From positions 124,001-188,000 of the IMG/VR virus record IMGVR_UViG_3300045125_000071: a stretch of 64,000 nt of DNA; one strand, given 5' to 3'. Below, in pieces: positions 16,400 through 61,326 of the stretch (positions are counted from its first letter, which is position 1; every line of letters begins with the position of its first letter). The notes under the pieces were generated by a model that saw nothing but the letters and a program-made list of their open reading frames with translations, ran no database searches and was not told the origin of the DNA. A program made the position numbers and the translations under genes.

Positions 16400-16950
16400 A
16401 ATTTTTGATTTCGAATGTGGTTTAAAACTTCATTAGCAATATTATAATCAACATTAAATTCATTAAAAGGTAAATTATTAACCAATAATAACTCTTTGAT
16501 TTTTTTGTCAATTGACAGAGATTCTTCATAATCCTGATATCTACCAACATTTTCATATGTATTTTCTAACCTCTTTAGGTAAATATTTATATTTTTGTAT
16601 TTTTTAAAAAGTGAAATAATAAAATTATCATAACTTTCATCATAAAATTCACTAGGGTAATTTGAAAAAGAATCGTACATGTTTTTATATACCAGACCAA
16701 GTAGTATTGGTGAATCAACAATAATATAGTCCACCTTACCATATAATCTAGATATATTTCTATGCTGATTTGCTGTGACGTAAAATTGGTCTTTTATTGA
16801 TTCAATATTACCATCCCAAGCAAGAACTTTTGGGAATTCTTGTGTTAATTCAACACTATACGCTCTTTTTTTCATTACAGAAAATAATTCCGAGGCAAGC
16901 GTGGATTTACCAGAACCTGGTCCACCAAATAAATTTATGATAATACTCAT
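16396..16950 (-). CDS. P-loop NTPase/kinase (AAA_28/NadR-like)
   Basis: INLFGGPGSGKST Walker A; YIIVDSPILL. Confidence 0.75.
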   Translation of the reverse strand: MSIIINLFGGPGSGKSTLASELFSVMKKRAYSVELTQEFPKVLAWDGNIESIKDQFYVTANQHRNISRLYGKVDYIIVDSPILLGLVYKNMYDSFSNYPSEFYDESYDNFIISLFKKYKNINIYLKRLENTYENVGRYQDYEESLSIDKKIKELLLVNNLPFNEFNVDYNIANEVLNHIRNQKL

Positions 16951-44523: not shown

Positions 44524-44820
44524 ATGTTAAGTCACACACGCAAGAGCGCAGGTGGAACATCGTTCCACGGCTCGGAGATTCGCACAACGGCAGGCAAACT
44601 CAAAGCGTTGTTCCCCGATTCGTATGACGAGAGCAATGATGGGAGGGACAAGACCAACTACGACTTCACCCTTCAAGACGATGATGGGAACATCGTGACA
44701 ATCTACGATTGGAAGGAGTACCGACCGATTGGTGACAATGAAATGATTAACTTCCACATCGGAGGTATGAGCCAAGACATCACCGAAAGGGCGAGGATGT
44801 ACCTTGAAAGCGTCGTATGA
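44524..44820 (+). CDS. hypothetical phage protein
   Basis: GTSFHG...DKT..F...TIYDWK...HIGG. Confidence 0.75.
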   Translation: MLSHTRKSAGGTSFHGSEIRTTAGKLKALFPDSYDESNDGRDKTNYDFTLQDDDGNIVTIYDWKEYRPIGDNEMINFHIGGMSQDITERARMYLESVV

Positions 44821-47196: not shown

Positions 47197-48133
47197 TGTC
47201 AAATTTTGCGTAACATTCATACCTACCATTAAATTCTTTTTTTGGTAGGTATGAATTATTCTTATTGTTGTTTTTTATCGTTACTTCAATTTCACTAATA
47301 TATTTAGCATCGCCATTAATAATTTTTAATATTTCAAAATTGTACGGCATTTTATTTTTCCCCCTAAATCTCTGTGAAATTGAATTGAAAGTTTTACCTA
47401 CTTTGAAAAATCTCTCATCATTATCCCAACATTCTAATATGTATAATTTGAATGAATCAAATTTATTTGATTTTAGACCTTTCTGTTCCCATAATCGGTA
47501 ACTCCAAACACCATAATTCATACCACATTTTTTACAACCTTTTCCATTCAAATGATTATTAGGTCGTTGGTTAAATTCCCCATGAACAGAACAAATTATT
47601 TTAACATCAGTTTTTGTATTTACATATTTTGATAATGAATAATCGTAGGTATTACCATGAACACTAATTGCTTTATCTACAAAATCTTGTGTTGTCAATT
47701 TCCCTGTTTTTCCACATTTTGGGCAACCATATCCATTTAGATGGTCGTTAGGTCGTTGGTTAAATTCCCCATGAATATGACATAATATTGTGACTTTTGT
47801 TGTTGAATTAATTATAACACATTTTGAGTAATCATATTTATCACCATGAACTTTTTTAGCTTTTTCAATAAAAATATCAGAGTATTTCGGTTTGATAGAT
47901 TTTTTTACTATTTCTTTCTTAATTTTCTCTTTTACCTTTCTTTTACTTTTATTGTATTGTTTCAATTTTTCTTTTCTTTCTGGTGATAGATTTTTATAAT
48001 AATTTTTATCATATTCCAATCTCTGTTTTTTTATTTTCTCTATATTGTTTTTCTTGTACTCCCTGGCTCTTGCCTTATATCTTTCTCTTTGTTCTTCCGT
48101 TAAGTCTAACCATTTCATATTGCTATTTATCAA
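47177..48133 (-). mobile_element. free-standing homing endonuclease (DUF723 repeats + GIY-YIG-like C-terminus)
   Basis: Two F..KA..VHG..YDYS...C..HG.F.QRPN.HL.G.GC..C repeats; LYIL...FFKVGKT; AT-rich and antisense to the array. Confidence 0.8.
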
Positions 48134-53995: not shown

Positions 53996-54193
53996 ATGGC
54001 CAAAAGATACCAGGTCATTTCGCCAGACGGGTTCACCATCGAATTCGATGTGTGGGCATATCCATCAAAGAAAAAGGCAAAAGAGGCTTTTGAGAAGTGG
54101 AAGGAAAGATATACCAGACAAGGATATTATTCATCCGTGAAGTATGGTAGAATTCCTTTAGCCGAATTGGAAAATTATTGTCAAATTGGATAA
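53996..54193 (+). CDS. hypothetical protein
   Basis: V.SPDG..I...; R...QGYYSS...IPL. Confidence 0.7.
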   Translation: MAKRYQVISPDGFTIEFDVWAYPSKKKAKEAFEKWKERYTRQGYYSSVKYGRIPLAELENYCQIG

Positions 54194-54205
54194 AATTAAA
54201 ACAAA

Positions 54206-54391
54206 ATGAAACTTCGTAACTACATCCTGACTCTGGACGCAAAAGTTCAAAACCTTTACAAGAATACGATTGAGACAATGCATATGCAAGCATATAATTT
54301 GCGTGATGCAAAGGTGAAATCTTCAAGAATTGCACGTGATTACAACATGAAAGTTGTAAGTGTAAAACTGAACAGAGCGATTCATTTTTAA
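54206..54391 (+). CDS. hypothetical protein
   Basis: ORF track, in operon. Confidence 0.65.
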   Translation: MKLRNYILTLDAKVQNLYKNTIETMHMQAYNLRDAKVKSSRIARDYNMKVVSVKLNRAIHF

Positions 54392-54403
54392 ATTATAAAC
54401 ACA

Positions 54404-54778
54404 ATGAAAAAGATTCTTGAAAAAATCAGAAAAGCTTACGAGAAACACGGACAGGCTGCGGCTTTCGATGTCGCCAACGAACATGGGTTGAAGTACGAGT
54501 ACTGTTGGACTTGTGAAACGTCAAGCCCCGCTGTTGACCATCAATGTGCTATCTGTGGATGCGACACAACAACGCGTATGACACATACCGAGTTTTTCGA
54601 AAGAACGGATTACATTACTCTGGGACAGCAGAAGCTAACGCTGTTGGCTATTCTGGATAAAGGTGGATTGCACTCAACCCAGGTCGAAGACATTGAAGGA
54701 TTAATAAATTTCATCGACAGCTTTCAAGACACAGCCATTGATAATGGTATGAAAGAAGAAGATGTTTTTATAAATTAA
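54404..54778 (+). CDS. hypothetical protein with CxxC...CxxC
   Basis: YEYCWTCE...CAICG. Confidence 0.7.
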   Translation: MKKILEKIRKAYEKHGQAAAFDVANEHGLKYEYCWTCETSSPAVDHQCAICGCDTTTRMTHTEFFERTDYITLGQQKLTLLAILDKGGLHSTQVEDIEGLINFIDSFQDTAIDNGMKEEDVFIN

Positions 54779-54828
54779 ATTTGCGTAATTGATATAAACG
54801 TATTACCTTTATACCAAAATTCAGAAAC

Positions 54829-55029
54829 ATGGCACTCAAAAAACACATTCCAACAATCGAAGACAGAATCCAAGAAAGGAAAGATGTTCATGCAATGTTG
54901 AAGACATCGATGAAAGAAGTAAAAAGTCTTATCAATTGCCTGGATAAAATCGACGAGCAAATAAAAAAATTGGAAAAAAGAAAACGAAAAAAAGAAAGTG
55001 TGAACCAAAGTTCAAAAAGATTGTTCTAA
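54829..55029 (+). CDS. small coiled-coil protein
   Basis: ORF track. Confidence 0.6.
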   Translation: MALKKHIPTIEDRIQERKDVHAMLKTSMKEVKSLINCLDKIDEQIKKLEKRKRKKESVNQSSKRLF

Positions 55030-55056
55030 ATAAGTAACCAACAAAAACCAGATAAA

Positions 55057-55329
55057 ATGAAAGTACAAGTAGTTTGCAAAGTTCCGAGCGGACATCAGCC
55101 AAAACCAGTCAAAATTCTTTGCGGTGGCTGCAAGAAAAACCCCGATGGTTCGTTTTCATTTGAAATGGAATTCGATACCAAGGTTGATGCAACCCAATGG
55201 TTGTATGATAGGGCATATGAAATCGCAAAAGATGATAAGGAACTCAAGCGGCTCAATTCGCAAATCAGGGTTCACAAGAAACTGAGCTATGATGTTGCGA
55301 CAGCAAAAATCATGCGTGTCAAAAACTAA
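55057..55329 (+). CDS. hypothetical protein
   Basis: ORF track. Confidence 0.65.
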   Translation: MKVQVVCKVPSGHQPKPVKILCGGCKKNPDGSFSFEMEFDTKVDATQWLYDRAYEIAKDDKELKRLNSQIRVHKKLSYDVATAKIMRVKN

Positions 55330-55331
55330 TC

Positions 55332-55514
55332 ATGTCAAAAAGAGTTATCAAGTACGAAGTAATCGTCTGTGGTGAGGTCATCAAGGTCGAAAACCTAAAA
55401 GAGGCTGAGGACAGGTTGAAGAGGCACGAACTATCGGACTTCGCACCATCCTACATCCTCCGAAAGGAGTTCTCCCAGAAAGGGAATTTGCTGGATGTGA
55501 TAATGGTGGGTTAA
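55332..55514 (+). CDS. hypothetical protein
   Basis: ORF track; terminator follows. Confidence 0.6.
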   Translation: MSKRVIKYEVIVCGEVIKVENLKEAEDRLKRHELSDFAPSYILRKEFSQKGNLLDVIMVG

Positions 55515-55674
55515 CTCATTGCGGATGGGTTCATGAGGACAAGGAGATGCCGAAAGGTGTCTCCTTTTTTATGAAATTATTATCAAATATTTTGTTAATG
55601 TGGAAAAGATTATATATTTTTGCACGTACAATACACAATATGTTGATATTTTTGCACAAGTAAATCAAATCAAA

Positions 55675-55905: not shown

Positions 55906-56001
55906 TTCTGTGAGATAGCTATTGTTGGTTTTAGTTCGAAAGCCCCGCAGTTTTGTGGGGCTTTTTTATTTGTTCGAGAGTCGTCCTGGTTAACAGCTCC
56001 A

Positions 56002-56043
56002 GATTTTGTCTAGTTTTGGAACGATTTAAAACTAGACAAAATC
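56002..56043. repeat. cassette palindrome 22
   Basis: Consensus arms, N12. Confidence 0.95.
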
Positions 56044-56111
56044 CATCCAGGGAAAAAATTTTGCATATCAAAGTATTATTTGTATATTTGTGTAAACAAA
56101 ACATATCACAT

Positions 56112-56872
56112 ATGAAGTTTAAATCAATTGCGGAAGCCAAGAGACAAACGGGCTTATCTTACCTGGGCAATGTTAACCACAGCGCAAAGCATGAAAAGAA
56201 CGCGAAGTACAATGAGCTTGTATATGCATTATATCTGGCTCCAGCTAAGCTGTCTGGTTACAATGTTTGTCCAAAGTCGAACGCCGAATGTCGGTTATTA
56301 TGTCTGAATGAAAGCGGACAAAATAAGATGGACAAGGGGAATATCAATAATGCCCGAATCAAAAAAACAAAACTGTTTTTCGAGGACAGACAGTTTTTCA
56401 TGGAATGGCTGGTGGCTGAAATCAAACGCTACAAAACCAAAGCCAAAACGATGGGGTATCATTTCAGCATTCAGATTGAATAATACGTCGGATATCAGTC
56501 CCGAACAATTTCATATGGAAATCGATGGGGAACGGAAAAATATACTACAGCTGTTTCCCAGATGTACAGTTTTACGATTATACCAAAGTGGACAATCGAA
56601 TTGACATTGTCAACAAACATACCAACTATGACCTTACCTTCTCGTATGACGGGTACAATTGGGAGGTCTGTGAAAAGATGCTGAAGAACAATGTTCGGGT
56701 GGCGGTTGTCTTCGCAAAGCAACTTCCTGAACAATGGCGGGGACATAACGTCATCAGCGGGGACGACTACGATGTGCGCTTCCGTGACGACAGGAACGTC
56801 ATTGTCGGCCTGAAGTTCAAGCAGGTACGGAACAAGTATACCAAGGACATGAAGTTCGTGGTGCAGGACTAA
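56112..56872 (+). CDS. GP88-like protein (mycobacteriophage gene product 88 family; frameshifted)
   Basis: LYLAPA..SG.NVCP....C...CL..SG; RLN.TSDI; FYDYTK; YDLTFS; D..D.RF.D...VGLK.K. Confidence 0.7.
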
Positions 56873-59735: not shown

Positions 59736-59942
59736 ATGAATAACAAAAAAATGAAAAGGGTCGGCACCCAAAAGAACGCCAGCAATTACACCCGCACAGG
59801 GAATAACATCTACTTCGACGGCTACTCGTACCGTGTACGCGTGAGCGTAGATGGTGTCAGGTACAGCAGGAACTTTACAACAAAGAAAGCAGCAATGCAG
59901 TACCGTAAACAATTGCTCTCCGAGCAACTAGAAGTCGCGTAA
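59736..59942 (+). CDS. small AP2/Arm-type DNA-binding protein
   Basis: NIYF...SYRVRV...G...S..F.TKK.A..YR. Confidence 0.6.
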   Translation: MNNKKMKRVGTQKNASNYTRTGNNIYFDGYSYRVRVSVDGVRYSRNFTTKKAAMQYRKQLLSEQLEVA

Positions 59943-60039
59943 TACAATAATCTTGCATGCCGTGCAATGCCAGTGCTTTATGTACTGGCATTTTTTTTGC
60001 ACAACATATTACAAAAATTTATATATGTATTACTACCGC

Positions 60040-60057
60040 ATGTTCCACGTGGAACAT
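60040..60057. promoter_or_regulatory. parS: parS-like centromere palindrome
   Basis: ATGTTCCACGTGGAACAT, an 18-bp perfect palindrome whose core fits the consensus TGTTNCACGTGNAACA. Confidence 0.75.
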
Positions 60058-60106
60058 ATCCTGGCGGCTCCGCGTATGACAATGTGTATGTATGACACAT
60101 TATTAG

Positions 60107-60115
60107 TTATCCACA
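60107..60115 (+). promoter_or_regulatory. DnaA box
   Basis: TTATCCACA exact consensus, single copy. Confidence 0.35.
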
Positions 60116-60389
60116 ATATATGCACTGACATTATGACATGCCAGGGCCAGAAATTTTGTCAGTAGGTCGAGATTGGGACGTAGGACAATCCCCAAATGTA
60201 TTACAACTATTTTACATATTATCTACTTATTTATATTCAATATATTAGAACTGAATTTTTGTGGGTTTGTAATACTTAAAACGCCAATAAATTAATTACG
60301 ACAAAATGACCTGACTAAATAACCCTTTTAGATTACAAACAACTGACATTATGTTAGTAACATTTCTTTGCACAATAACATAAATTATA

Positions 60390-60725
60390 TTAGTGTGCAT
60401 CCCATATTAGGGGTTCATCGCAGTTCGGACATTCATTAAGAACCAGTAAATTATTCTTTCGGAAGCTCCATTTTTCTACTATCTCTTTATCGTTTTCAGT
60501 TAGTTTTCGGTATCCATCAAGACAACCTATCTCGCCATTTATGTCATAGTATTTTCCTTTGTACCTTGTAATGACATGGTTCATTTCCTGGTTTATGTAT
60601 GGTATACAATTCTTATACATTCTACTTAGTAATACATGGAACCTATAACATCCTCCCCTTGTAAAAATATATTCCATGTATCCATCGGTGTTCCTTAGTT
60701 CATCTATGAATTTTTCCAAAGTCAT
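60390..60725 (-). CDS. hypothetical phage protein
   Basis: YIFTRGGCYRFH..L...Y...H.......YYDI.G. Confidence 0.75.
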   Translation of the reverse strand: MTLEKFIDELRNTDGYMEYIFTRGGCYRFHVLLSRMYKNCIPYINQEMNHVITRYKGKYYDINGEIGCLDGYRKLTENDKEIVEKWSFRKNNLLVLNECPNCDEPLIWDAH

Positions 60726-61326
60726 AGTTCTTCCTTTCCTATTTGCAGGGTCTTCAGGTGTTTGATTAGTTCTTCTAGGTTATAGGGTTCAAAGTCTGGG
60801 TTTCCGTCAATACCTATATCCATTCTCCTACCTTTTGAAATCTTCATTATGGTTAGGAAGATGACAATGACCGTGTAGGTGTATGCGACCTTTACGGAGG
60901 TTGTTCCATGTTTCCAAAGGGTAGTGCATACATTCTATGGTTTCTTCTTTGTATTCGAATTGTTCGAACCAATTTACGGATAGGAATAATTTTTCTTATG
61001 TTATTATGATTCTTATCAATGTGATGGTCATGGTTACCGAGAATGAGGTGTATGTTTTTACATATGATTCTATTACGGAATTCTTCGATGTTTTCAAATC
61101 CACCGAAACTCCAATCTCCCAGGTGTATTAGAATATCGTCTTCTTTAACAAGGTTGTTTATATTGTTGACGATTGCATCATTCATCTCTTCAAGGGTATT
61201 GAAGTTCCTTGTTCTTTCTGTGGGTATTTCTCCTTCTGGTGTTCTCCAATTTGTTGTTCCTCTACAGATATTTTTCTGTGAGTAATGGGTATCGGAGGTT
61301 AACCATATGGTTTTATTGTTATCCAA
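60722..61326 (-). CDS. calcineurin-like metallophosphoesterase (frameshifted)
   Basis: TSDTH, HLGD, GNHD, C-terminal HLHGH.H. Confidence 0.85.

What the first reader, a model, noticed from the sequence alone, without database searches (positions are those of the whole stretch)
59943..60389. Perfect parS palindrome plus a DnaA box in a non-coding region where transcription converges
Seen: ATGTTCCACGTGGAACAT (60040-60057) and TTATCCACA (60107-60115) in ~450 bp of non-coding DNA between + and - gene blocks. Established: TGTTNCACGTGNAACA is the chromosomal ParB-binding consensus. Inference: the phage may recruit host or its own ParB/SMC to position or segregate its DNA (carrier state or replication factory), or titrate host ParB; the region could be near an origin. 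A single DnaA box alone is weak evidence.
Basis: partly seen in the sequence, partly recalled or inferred. Interest (0 to 1): 0.72.

Follow-up and report, generated by a model that had tools for sequence, protein, structure and literature searches.

The report
Bacterial-type parS centromere site in jumbo phage
A freshwater T4-like jumbo phage carries an exact copy of the bacterial chromosome-segregation site parS in a gene-free gap. Related phages keep the same motif, one of them around a phage ParB-like gene, so it is probably a real ParB-family docking site; the nearby DnaA box is chance.

Summary
ATGTTCCACGTGGAACAT (60040-60057) is a perfect 18-bp palindrome and an exact parS. It is the only one in the 251-kb virus record, where about 0.0001-0.0002 are expected. 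It lies 40 nt after an intrinsic terminator in a 447-bp gap between convergent gene blocks.

The phage is a freshwater T4-like jumbo phage. The motif recurs in relatives:
- A 324-kb relative (97% complete) has five copies of the 14-bp core, one of them in the same gap.
- About 44 of 76 relatives carry the element right after the tail-sheath terminator.
- One relative (capsid protein 75% identical) has five canonical parS within 4.5 kb around a divergent ParB-like gene.

The window's genome and the 324-kb relative encode no detectable ParB, ParB-like protein or ParA.

Best reading (confidence 0.55): a functional loading site for a ParB-family protein. Here that is most likely the host's chromosomal ParB, or a phage ParB-like protein encoded in the missing 25% of the genome.

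Rivals are a local operator, a relic, or a hairpin. The DnaA box and the origin idea are not supported. The closest precedent is phi29, which carries host-type parS bound by Spo0J. I rate this a new variant of a known kind. The host is unknown and binding is untested.

The parts
60040..60057 (.). Perfect 18-bp palindrome. The inner 16 bp (60041-60056) are an exact canonical parS, and the inner 14 bp (GTTCCACGTGGAAC) are the core conserved in relatives.
   Evidence: The syntenic copy in G001/G002 is shown.
59943..60389 (.). 447-bp non-coding gap between convergent gene blocks. It is AT-richer than its flanks.
   Evidence: Apart from the palindrome and a short flank, nothing aligns with the relative's gap.
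59966..59999 (+). Intrinsic terminator of the + gene block: an 11-pair stem followed by a T-run. It ends 40 nt upstream of the palindrome.
   Evidence: The same terminator-then-palindrome order is seen in relatives.
59736..59942 (+). Last gene of the + block, a 68-aa ORF. Its homologue flanks the syntenic gap in G001.
60390..60725 (-). Last gene of the - block, a YunG-like phage protein (PF24591). It was used as the anchor to find syntenic relatives.
60107..60115 (+). Exact DnaA-box string TTATCCACA, judged a chance match. It is not part of the feature.
60124..60135 (+). First copy of ACTGACATTATG. The second copy is at 60342-60353, and these are the only two in the genome. It is also the right arm of an inverted repeat with 59966-59976 that brackets the palindrome almost symmetrically. 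Its significance is unclear.
54187..55550 (+). Slot syntenic to the ParB-like gene of relatives G032/G033. Here it holds unrelated small ORFs and no ParB-like gene. It lies about 4.5 kb upstream of the palindrome.

Best explanation
The palindrome is a functional, centromere-like loading site for a ParB-family protein, with the exact sequence of bacterial chromosomal parS.

Proposed mechanism (inferred, not shown). A ParB dimer nucleates on the 16-bp site and, as in chromosomal ParABS systems, closes as a CTP clamp and spreads onto the flanking phage DNA. The site sits just behind an intrinsic terminator in a convergent, transcription-poor gap, so RNA polymerase seldom dislodges the complex.

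Which protein binds. This genome (251 kb, about 75% complete) and its 97%-complete relative encode no ParB, ParB-like protein or ParA. The most likely binder here is therefore the host's chromosomal ParB. A divergent phage ParB-like protein of the kind some clade members encode could be the binder if it lies in the unassembled 25%.

Likely consequence (inferred). Either the phage DNA is positioned or partitioned, for example in a persistent or carrier-state infection, or neighbouring DNA is organised or silenced in the manner of ParB or KorB. Soaking up host ParB is a third possibility.
For: Shown:
- The site is an exact parS and the only one in 251 kb, where about 1e-4 are expected. It persists in a genome that otherwise avoids CACGTG.
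- The same 18-mer is a chromosomal site in at least 120 bacterial contigs from many phyla, often in clusters.
- Relative G001 keeps the 14-bp core in the syntenic gap, while the rest of the gap does not align.
- G001 has five perfect cores. The reversed-pattern control finds 0-1.
- About 44 of 76 relatives carry the element 0-12 nt after the tail-sheath terminator. Across them G2, T4 and A13 are invariant, and free C/T and G/A variation occurs at the two N positions of the parS consensus.
- G000 lacks the sheath-tube copy but has a perfect copy elsewhere, which argues for a role that does not depend on position.
- In G039/G040 (capsid protein 75% identical to G000's) five canonical parS lie in successive intergenic gaps around a ParB-like gene. 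That gene matches phrog_12305 at E 6e-22, and its predicted fold matches ParB, Noc and KorB best.
- That cluster is syntenic with the G001 region that holds two of its sites.
- No ParB, ParB-like protein or ParA was found in G000 or G001.

Precedent: phi29 carries five host-type parS sites used by Spo0J (PMC2731898).
Against: - No binding data exist and the host is unknown.
- Large relatives G006-G009 have no perfect site.
- Many sheath-tube copies are degenerate at the central CG/GT (CACATG, CACAAG, CACGAG, CACGCG), which should weaken canonical ParB binding.
- In the sheath-tube context a TATAAT/TATAAA box follows the palindrome by 5-7 nt, which suggests a local operator role there.
- The phage ParB-like protein has DGQHR instead of the GERRxR box and no recognisable HTH_ParB domain, so its specificity for canonical parS is unproven.
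- G000 has a single site.
- The G000 assembly carries frameshifts.
Confidence: 0.55

Rival explanations
1. The palindrome is an operator for a phage-encoded transcription regulator that is not a ParB. It would act locally on a promoter or terminator, and its identity with parS would be coincidental.
For: - In the sheath-tube gap the palindrome is followed at a fixed 5-7 nt by a TATAAT/TATAAA box and lies about 250-300 nt upstream of the tail-tube gene.
- The left half TGTTCCAC is more conserved than the centre or the right half.
- G001 site 156263 lies about 25 nt upstream of a gene start.
Against: - In the window there is no downstream gene on either strand and no good -10 box next to the site.
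- G000 lost the sheath-tube copy yet keeps a perfect copy elsewhere.
- A chance 14-16-bp identity with parS is about 1 in 16,000 for an arbitrary palindromic operator.
- The motif clusters around a ParB-like gene in G039/G040.
Confidence: 0.17
2. The site is a relic. An ancestral phage parS/ParB-like module lost its ParB-like gene in the G000/G001 lineage, and the window site is a not-yet-decayed leftover with no present function.
For: - The ParB-like gene is absent from G000 and G001, including its syntenic slot at window 54187-55550.
- Many relatives show CpG-type decay of the centre, and several large relatives have lost perfect sites.
- The palindrome TGTTTCATATGAAACA, at position 16565 of the full genome record G000 (outside the window), looks like a parS in which both CpG cytosines have deaminated.
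Against: - The window site is a perfect 18-bp palindrome in a genome that is depleted of CACGTG.
- G001, which also lacks the gene, keeps five perfect 14-bp cores.
- The syntenic site is the only conserved block in otherwise unalignable gaps.
Confidence: 0.13
3. The element acts as a nucleic-acid hairpin or cruciform, a GTTCC/GGAAC stem with an ACGT loop, linked to transcription termination or RNA processing rather than protein binding.
For: - It follows intrinsic terminators directly.
- The changes in degenerate copies fall mostly in the central four bases.
- In G039 each parS is nested inside an 11-bp inverted repeat, GTTTTGGCAGT...ACTGCCAAAAC.
- G001 site 162656 is flanked by TTTACTGGA...TCCAGTAAA.
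Against: - A 5-bp stem is weak, and the gap shows no excess folding energy.
- The arms are conserved in sequence rather than by covariation, and C..A combinations occur (L389/L390).
- A hairpin does not explain the exact match to parS or the association with a ParB-like gene.
Confidence: 0.06
4. The gap is a replication origin marked by a DnaA box and a parS.
For: - One exact DnaA-box string is present.
- The gap is AT-richer than its flanks.
- Cumulative GC skew turns here.
Against: - There is a single box at chance frequency and no cluster of boxes.
- The skew turn coincides with the switch in gene orientation.
- The box is not at the syntenic position in G001.
- No iteron array beyond one 12-mer pair was found.
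Confidence: 0.03

Closest known systems
phi29-family parS sites bound by host Spo0J (ParB) (PMC2731898, citing Meijer et al. 2005)
   Same: A virulent phage carries several copies of the host chromosomal parS sequence without encoding ParA or ParB. The host ParB is thought to act on the phage DNA.
   Different: phi29 is a 19-kb protein-primed podovirus of a spore-former, and the function there is entrapment in the spore. Here the phage is a roughly 300-kb T4-like freshwater phage with a Gram-negative-type endolysin (PG_binding_1 + GH19). Its host is unknown, it has one site rather than five, and some clade members have their own ParB-like gene.
Chromosomal ParABS (Spo0J/ParB with TGTTNCACGTGNAACA)
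   Same: The 16-bp sequence is identical, including G2 and A7, the positions that distinguish parS from the Noc-binding site (from my own knowledge of the ParB/Noc literature). The exact 18-mer occurs in many bacterial chromosomes.
   Different: The site is on a virus. There is no adjacent parAB operon and no origin-proximal cluster in this genome.
Phage-plasmid and actinobacteriophage parABS cassettes (P1, P7, N15, mycobacteriophage RedRock type; from my own knowledge)
   Same: A phage-borne centromere-like site. In relative G039/G040 the sites cluster around a ParB-family gene.
   Different: Those cassettes have parA and parB adjacent to element-specific parS sequences and belong to temperate, episomal prophages. 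Here there is no ParA, the parS is the chromosomal consensus, and the phage is T4-like with no integrase in G000 or G001.
RK2 KorB and its OB operator network
   Same: A ParB-family protein with palindromic sites scattered in intergenic and promoter regions. KorB is among the best fold matches of the clade's ParB-like protein. In G039 a site sits in each of five consecutive intergenic gaps.
   Different: The OB sequence differs from parS. No regulatory effect is shown here, and the window site has no promoter beside it.

Membership tests
Chromosomal-type parS (ParB nucleation site) | Match to the 16-bp consensus TGTTNCACGTGNAACA, including G2/A7 and their symmetric partners. | tested here: met
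   0 mismatches at 60041-60056. The identical 18-mer is present in at least 120 bacterial contigs.
Chromosomal-type parS (ParB nucleation site) | Conserved in related genomes beyond neutral expectation. | tested here: met
   The syntenic core is kept in G001/G002. G001 has five cores. The element is present in about 44 of 76 sheath-tube gaps. The distribution is patchy, and G006-G009 lack perfect sites.
Chromosomal-type parS (ParB nucleation site) | A cognate ParB is available. | tested here: inconclusive
   No ParB_N, HTH_ParB, TIGR00180 or phrog_12305 match in G000 or G001. The host, and therefore its ParB, is unknown. 25% of G000 is unassembled.
Chromosomal-type parS (ParB nucleation site) | Specific binding and CTP-dependent loading of ParB. 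| not testable with these tools
   Needs EMSA, BLI or ChIP with the host ParB or the phage ParB-like protein.
Mobile-element parABS partition cassette (P1/N15 type) | parA and parB genes adjacent to the centromere site. | tested here: not met
   No ParA: AAA_31 gives no hit and CbiA gives only P-loop-level hits. No ParB is encoded in G000. Only relatives G039/G040 have a ParB-like gene among the sites, and no ParA was seen there either.
phi29-type hijack of host ParB | Host-consensus parS on a virulent phage that lacks its own ParB. | tested here: met
   Sequence criterion met, and no phage ParB was found. There is no integrase in G000 or G001.
phi29-type hijack of host ParB | Host ParB-dependent segregation of phage DNA (into spores, for phi29). 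| not testable with these tools
   The host is unknown. The endolysin type suggests a Gram-negative host rather than a spore-former.
oriC-like origin | A cluster of DnaA boxes beside an AT-rich unwinding element. | tested here: not met
   One box at chance frequency and no other within one mismatch in the gap.

The most novel reading that the evidence does not exclude
A widespread clade of freshwater T4-like jumbo phages plants exact copies of the host chromosome's centromere (parS) on its own DNA. Members that have lost the phage ParB-like gene, including this genome, would rely entirely on host ParB-CTP clamps. These could partition or position the phage DNA during slow or persistent infections. 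Alternatively, once the genome has replicated to hundreds of copies, the sites could soak up ParB and derail host chromosome segregation and division.
Probability: 0.3. Interest if true: 0.8.

Novelty: new variant of a known kind. Interest (0 to 1): 0.6.

Why it matters
Jumbo phages are increasingly found persisting in growing host populations without integrating (bioRxiv 10.1101/2024.12.31.630880), and the mechanism of their inheritance is open. A chromosomal-type parS on a T4-like jumbo phage, with or without a phage ParB-like protein, offers a concrete and testable handle on that question. Tests could ask whether host ParB forms foci on phage DNA, whether the site affects inheritance, SMC loading or host division, and whether the divergent DGQHR ParB-like protein recognises the canonical centromere. 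It would extend the phi29/Spo0J precedent beyond spore-formers and beyond small phages.

Tried and rejected
- Alternative genetic code. ORF coverage under TGA, TAG or TAA read as sense, and table-4 ORF lists, did not give coherent genes near the site. The short ORFs are explained by frameshifts instead. Table 11 was kept.
- Megablast of the locus against named phages found no match.
- Rfam, tRNA and RNA-folding scans of the gap found nothing.
- Reads: three aquatic or freshwater runs hold only short low-depth contigs, and none covers 60005-61006. There is therefore no information on transcription of the gap.
- Host identification from the endolysin and the CCA-adding enzyme in the protein atlas gave only viral clusters.
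- Half-site enrichment in G000 is only about 2-fold for TGTTCCAC/GTGGAACA and was not used as evidence.
- The small acidic 130-aa gene that carries two G001 sites has no homologue in G000, and nothing suggests it binds DNA.
- Relatives found through the YunG-like gene at 58-60% identity (G003-G005, L007) lack the convergent gap, so they say nothing about conservation of this site.
- No complex prediction was run, because jobs with DNA receive no verdict.

Full report
OBSERVATION. The window is bases 124001-188000 of a 251,358-bp linear IMG/VR virus record, estimated about 75% complete.

The palindrome matches the parS consensus TGTTNCACGTGNAACA without a mismatch. It is the only hit at up to one mismatch in the whole record. 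First- and third-order Markov expectations for the 14-bp core are 0.0002 and 0.0001 per genome. CACGTG is under-represented in this genome, with 3 copies against 7-16 expected, and one of the three is this site.

The + gene block ends at 59942 and is followed by an intrinsic terminator, a hairpin at 59966-59992 plus a T-run. The - block ends at 60390 with a YunG-like gene. The 447-bp gap has no Rfam hit, no tRNA and no excess RNA folding energy.

The DnaA box is a chance event. There is one exact copy where about 0.5 per strand are expected, and 28 one-mismatch hits where 27.3 are expected. No second box lies in the gap.

WHAT THE GENOME IS. The major capsid protein is gp23-like. Its nearest named relatives are Rhodothermus phage RM378, Flavobacterium phage immuto, Microcystis phage Mel-JY01 and uncultured huge phages. 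A glycosyltransferase matches the XacN1 group of jumbo phages. More than 590 IMG/VR contigs carry close capsid or tail-tube homologues. Runs that hold pieces of the locus come from freshwater or aquatic metagenomes. The endolysin is PG_binding_1 + GH19. The host is not identified.

The assembly carries frameshifts. A phosphoesterase at 60722-61326 is spread over three frames, and a GP88 homologue is split in two. Another genetic code does not explain this.

CONSERVATION. Using the YunG-like gene as an anchor, relative G001 (323,865 bp, 97% complete) and the fragment G002 have CGTTCCACGTGGAACC in the corresponding gap between convergent blocks. The gaps are otherwise unalignable, apart from the neighbouring 60-68-aa gene and a short flank of the palindrome.

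G001 holds five sites with the perfect 14-bp core, at 47756, 156103, 156263, 162656 and 173901. The reversed-pattern control gives at most one hit.

The 47756 site lies between the tail-sheath and tail-tube genes, a few bases after the sheath terminator. That position is ancestral in the clade. In 80 tail-tube loci, about 44 of the 76 with enough upstream sequence carry TGTTCCAC-NN-GGAAC(C/A) 0-12 nt after the terminator T-run and 243-316 nt before the tube start codon.

Across unique variants, G2, T4 and A13 never change. Positions 5 and 12, the N positions of the consensus, vary freely (C/T and G/A in all combinations). The central dinucleotide is the least conserved (GT, AT, AA, GA, GC). 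CACATG and CATGTG are what CpG deamination would produce. Ten of the 76 loci keep the perfect 14-bp core (GTTNCACGTGNAAC); five of these (L395, L398, L399, L400, L418) match the full 16-bp consensus without a mismatch.

Most large genomes have a single site. G034, which is complete and has terminal repeats, has one perfect site; G032, G033, G037 and G038 also have one. G006-G009 have only centre-degenerate copies or none.

G000 has lost the sheath-tube copy but has its perfect copy in the convergent gap. A role tied to the tail-tube promoter would not predict this. A role that does not depend on position would.

WHO BINDS. Six-frame searches for ParB_N, HTH_ParB, TIGR00180, AAA_31 and CbiA find no ParB or ParA in G000 or G001.

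Some relatives (G032, G033, G034, G006, G045) encode a 247-254-aa protein that matches the PHROG 'ParB-like partition protein' phrog_12305 at E 6e-22. It matches Pfam ParB_N only weakly and has a DGQHR motif in place of GERRxR. A moderate-confidence model (pLDDT 67) finds ParB, Noc and KorB as its best PDB matches, but with low TM-scores of 0.25-0.31.

The decisive link is in G039/G040. G040's capsid protein is 75% identical to G000's. There this gene is surrounded by five canonical parS within 4.5 kb, one in each successive intergenic gap: TGTTCCACGTGGAACA, TGTTTCACGTGGAACA (twice) and CGTTTCACGTGGAACA (twice). Each is nested in an 11-bp inverted repeat.

This cluster is collinear with the G001 region that holds sites 156103 and 156263, but G001 lacks the gene. 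A profile of nine ParB-like proteins finds nothing in G001. An exhaustive hmmsearch of all six-frame ORFs of G000 also finds nothing, with a best E-value of 0.46. The slot syntenic to the G033 gene is window 54187-55550, about 4.5 kb from the palindrome. It holds unrelated small ORFs.

INTERPRETATION. The motif is a real, selected element of this phage clade. Three things make a ParB-family binding site the best-supported reading:
- its exact identity with the chromosomal centromere sequence;
- a variation pattern that spares the specificity positions;
- its clustering around a ParB-family gene in one member.

The same 18-mer is a chromosomal site in at least 120 bacterial contigs from many phyla, Bacteroidota among them.

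For the window's genome the binder is either host ParB or a phage ParB-like protein encoded in the missing quarter. I favour host ParB, because G001 keeps five perfect cores without the gene. Loading of ParB clamps and spreading onto flanking DNA is inferred from the known chromosomal mechanism. So is the idea that placement behind terminators shields the site from RNA polymerase.

The downstream purpose is also inference. It could be partition or positioning in persistent infection, KorB-like silencing, SMC recruitment, or ParB titration. The phi29/Spo0J precedent (PMC2731898) and reports of persistent jumbo-phage infections make the first option plausible.

RIVALS. There are four rival readings:
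- A non-ParB operator. This is supported by the fixed TATAAT box after the sheath-tube copies. It is contradicted by the window site, which has no promoter and no gene downstream.
- A relic of a lost ParB-like module. This is supported by the gene loss and the frequent decay of the centre. It is contradicted by the perfection of the site in a genome depleted of CACGTG and by G001's five perfect cores.
- A hairpin element. This is supported by the terminator context and the nested inverted repeats. It is contradicted by the weak stem, the lack of covariation and the lack of folding signal.
- An origin. There is no support beyond one chance DnaA box.

LIMITS.
- There is no binding or expression evidence. 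The read-laying step was uninformative.
- The host is unknown.
- G000 is incomplete and error-prone.
- Many IMG/VR loci are near-duplicates, so counts of loci are not independent events.
- What I state about parS/NBS specificity positions, half-site binding in Pseudomonas and partition cassettes of phage-plasmids comes from my own knowledge of the literature, not from tools used here.

Noticed in passing
window 28000-64000 (genome about 152-210 kb): There is a sharp composition step from 25-30% GC to 38-45% GC. The richer block is packed with short, mostly same-strand ORFs without family matches. It is the same variable small-gene region that holds the parS sites and ParB-like gene in relatives.
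   Followed up: partly
window 60722-61326 and 55953-56872: Genes are broken by frameshifts. A calcineurin-like phosphoesterase runs through three frames and a GP88 homologue is split in two. Only 15 ORFs of 350 aa or more exist in 251 kb. This points to indel errors in the assembly, or to pseudogenes.
   Followed up: partly
genome position 16565-16580 (outside the window, inside the ribonucleotide-reductase-like ORF): The perfect 16-bp palindrome TGTTTCATATGAAACA has parS arms, and its centre is what CACGTG becomes after both CpG cytosines deaminate. It may be a decayed second site.
   Followed up: no
window 59966-59976, 60124-60135, 60342-60353: ACTGACATTATG occurs exactly twice in the genome, both times in this gap. 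The first copy pairs with the terminator's 5' arm as an inverted repeat that brackets the palindrome at 63 and 64 nt. This could be chance.
   Followed up: partly
L348-L427 and L220-L225 (sheath-tube intergenic region of relatives): This is a conserved, complex non-coding region of 300-400 bp. In order it contains a terminator, the palindrome, a TATAAT/TATAAA box, a CCCAGTAT box about 32 nt further on, a CTAG-rich repeat stretch (CTAGTAT, CTAGAAC, CTGGAAC), TTGAYAWAATCAAG, and ATATTTATAA before the tube start codon. Its function is unknown.
   Followed up: partly
L456:100-4800 (G039): Each of the five parS is the centre of a roughly 58-bp near-palindrome, GTTTTGGCAGT-N10-14-parS-N8-20-ACTGCCAAAAC. 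The unit repeats in successive intergenic gaps around the ParB-like gene.
   Followed up: partly
L002:4330-5790 (G001): An HNH-type endonuclease gene is inserted next to the YunG-like gene. The gap here is 1 kb, full of GC-rich hairpins (GGGGACTC...GAGTCCCC followed by GTAAT) and holds seven or more GTAATAC/GTATTAC motifs. The window gap has three such motifs.
   Followed up: no
G006:159525-159538; G034:187797-188246: In G006 a parS-like GTTCCACACGGAAC lies inside the ParB-like gene itself. The complete relative G034 encodes a 273-aa tyrosine recombinase, which is unusual for a T4-like phage.
   Followed up: no
window 44552-44568: Two parS half-sites occur in everted orientation, GTGGAAC-ATC-GTTCCAC.
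   Followed up: no
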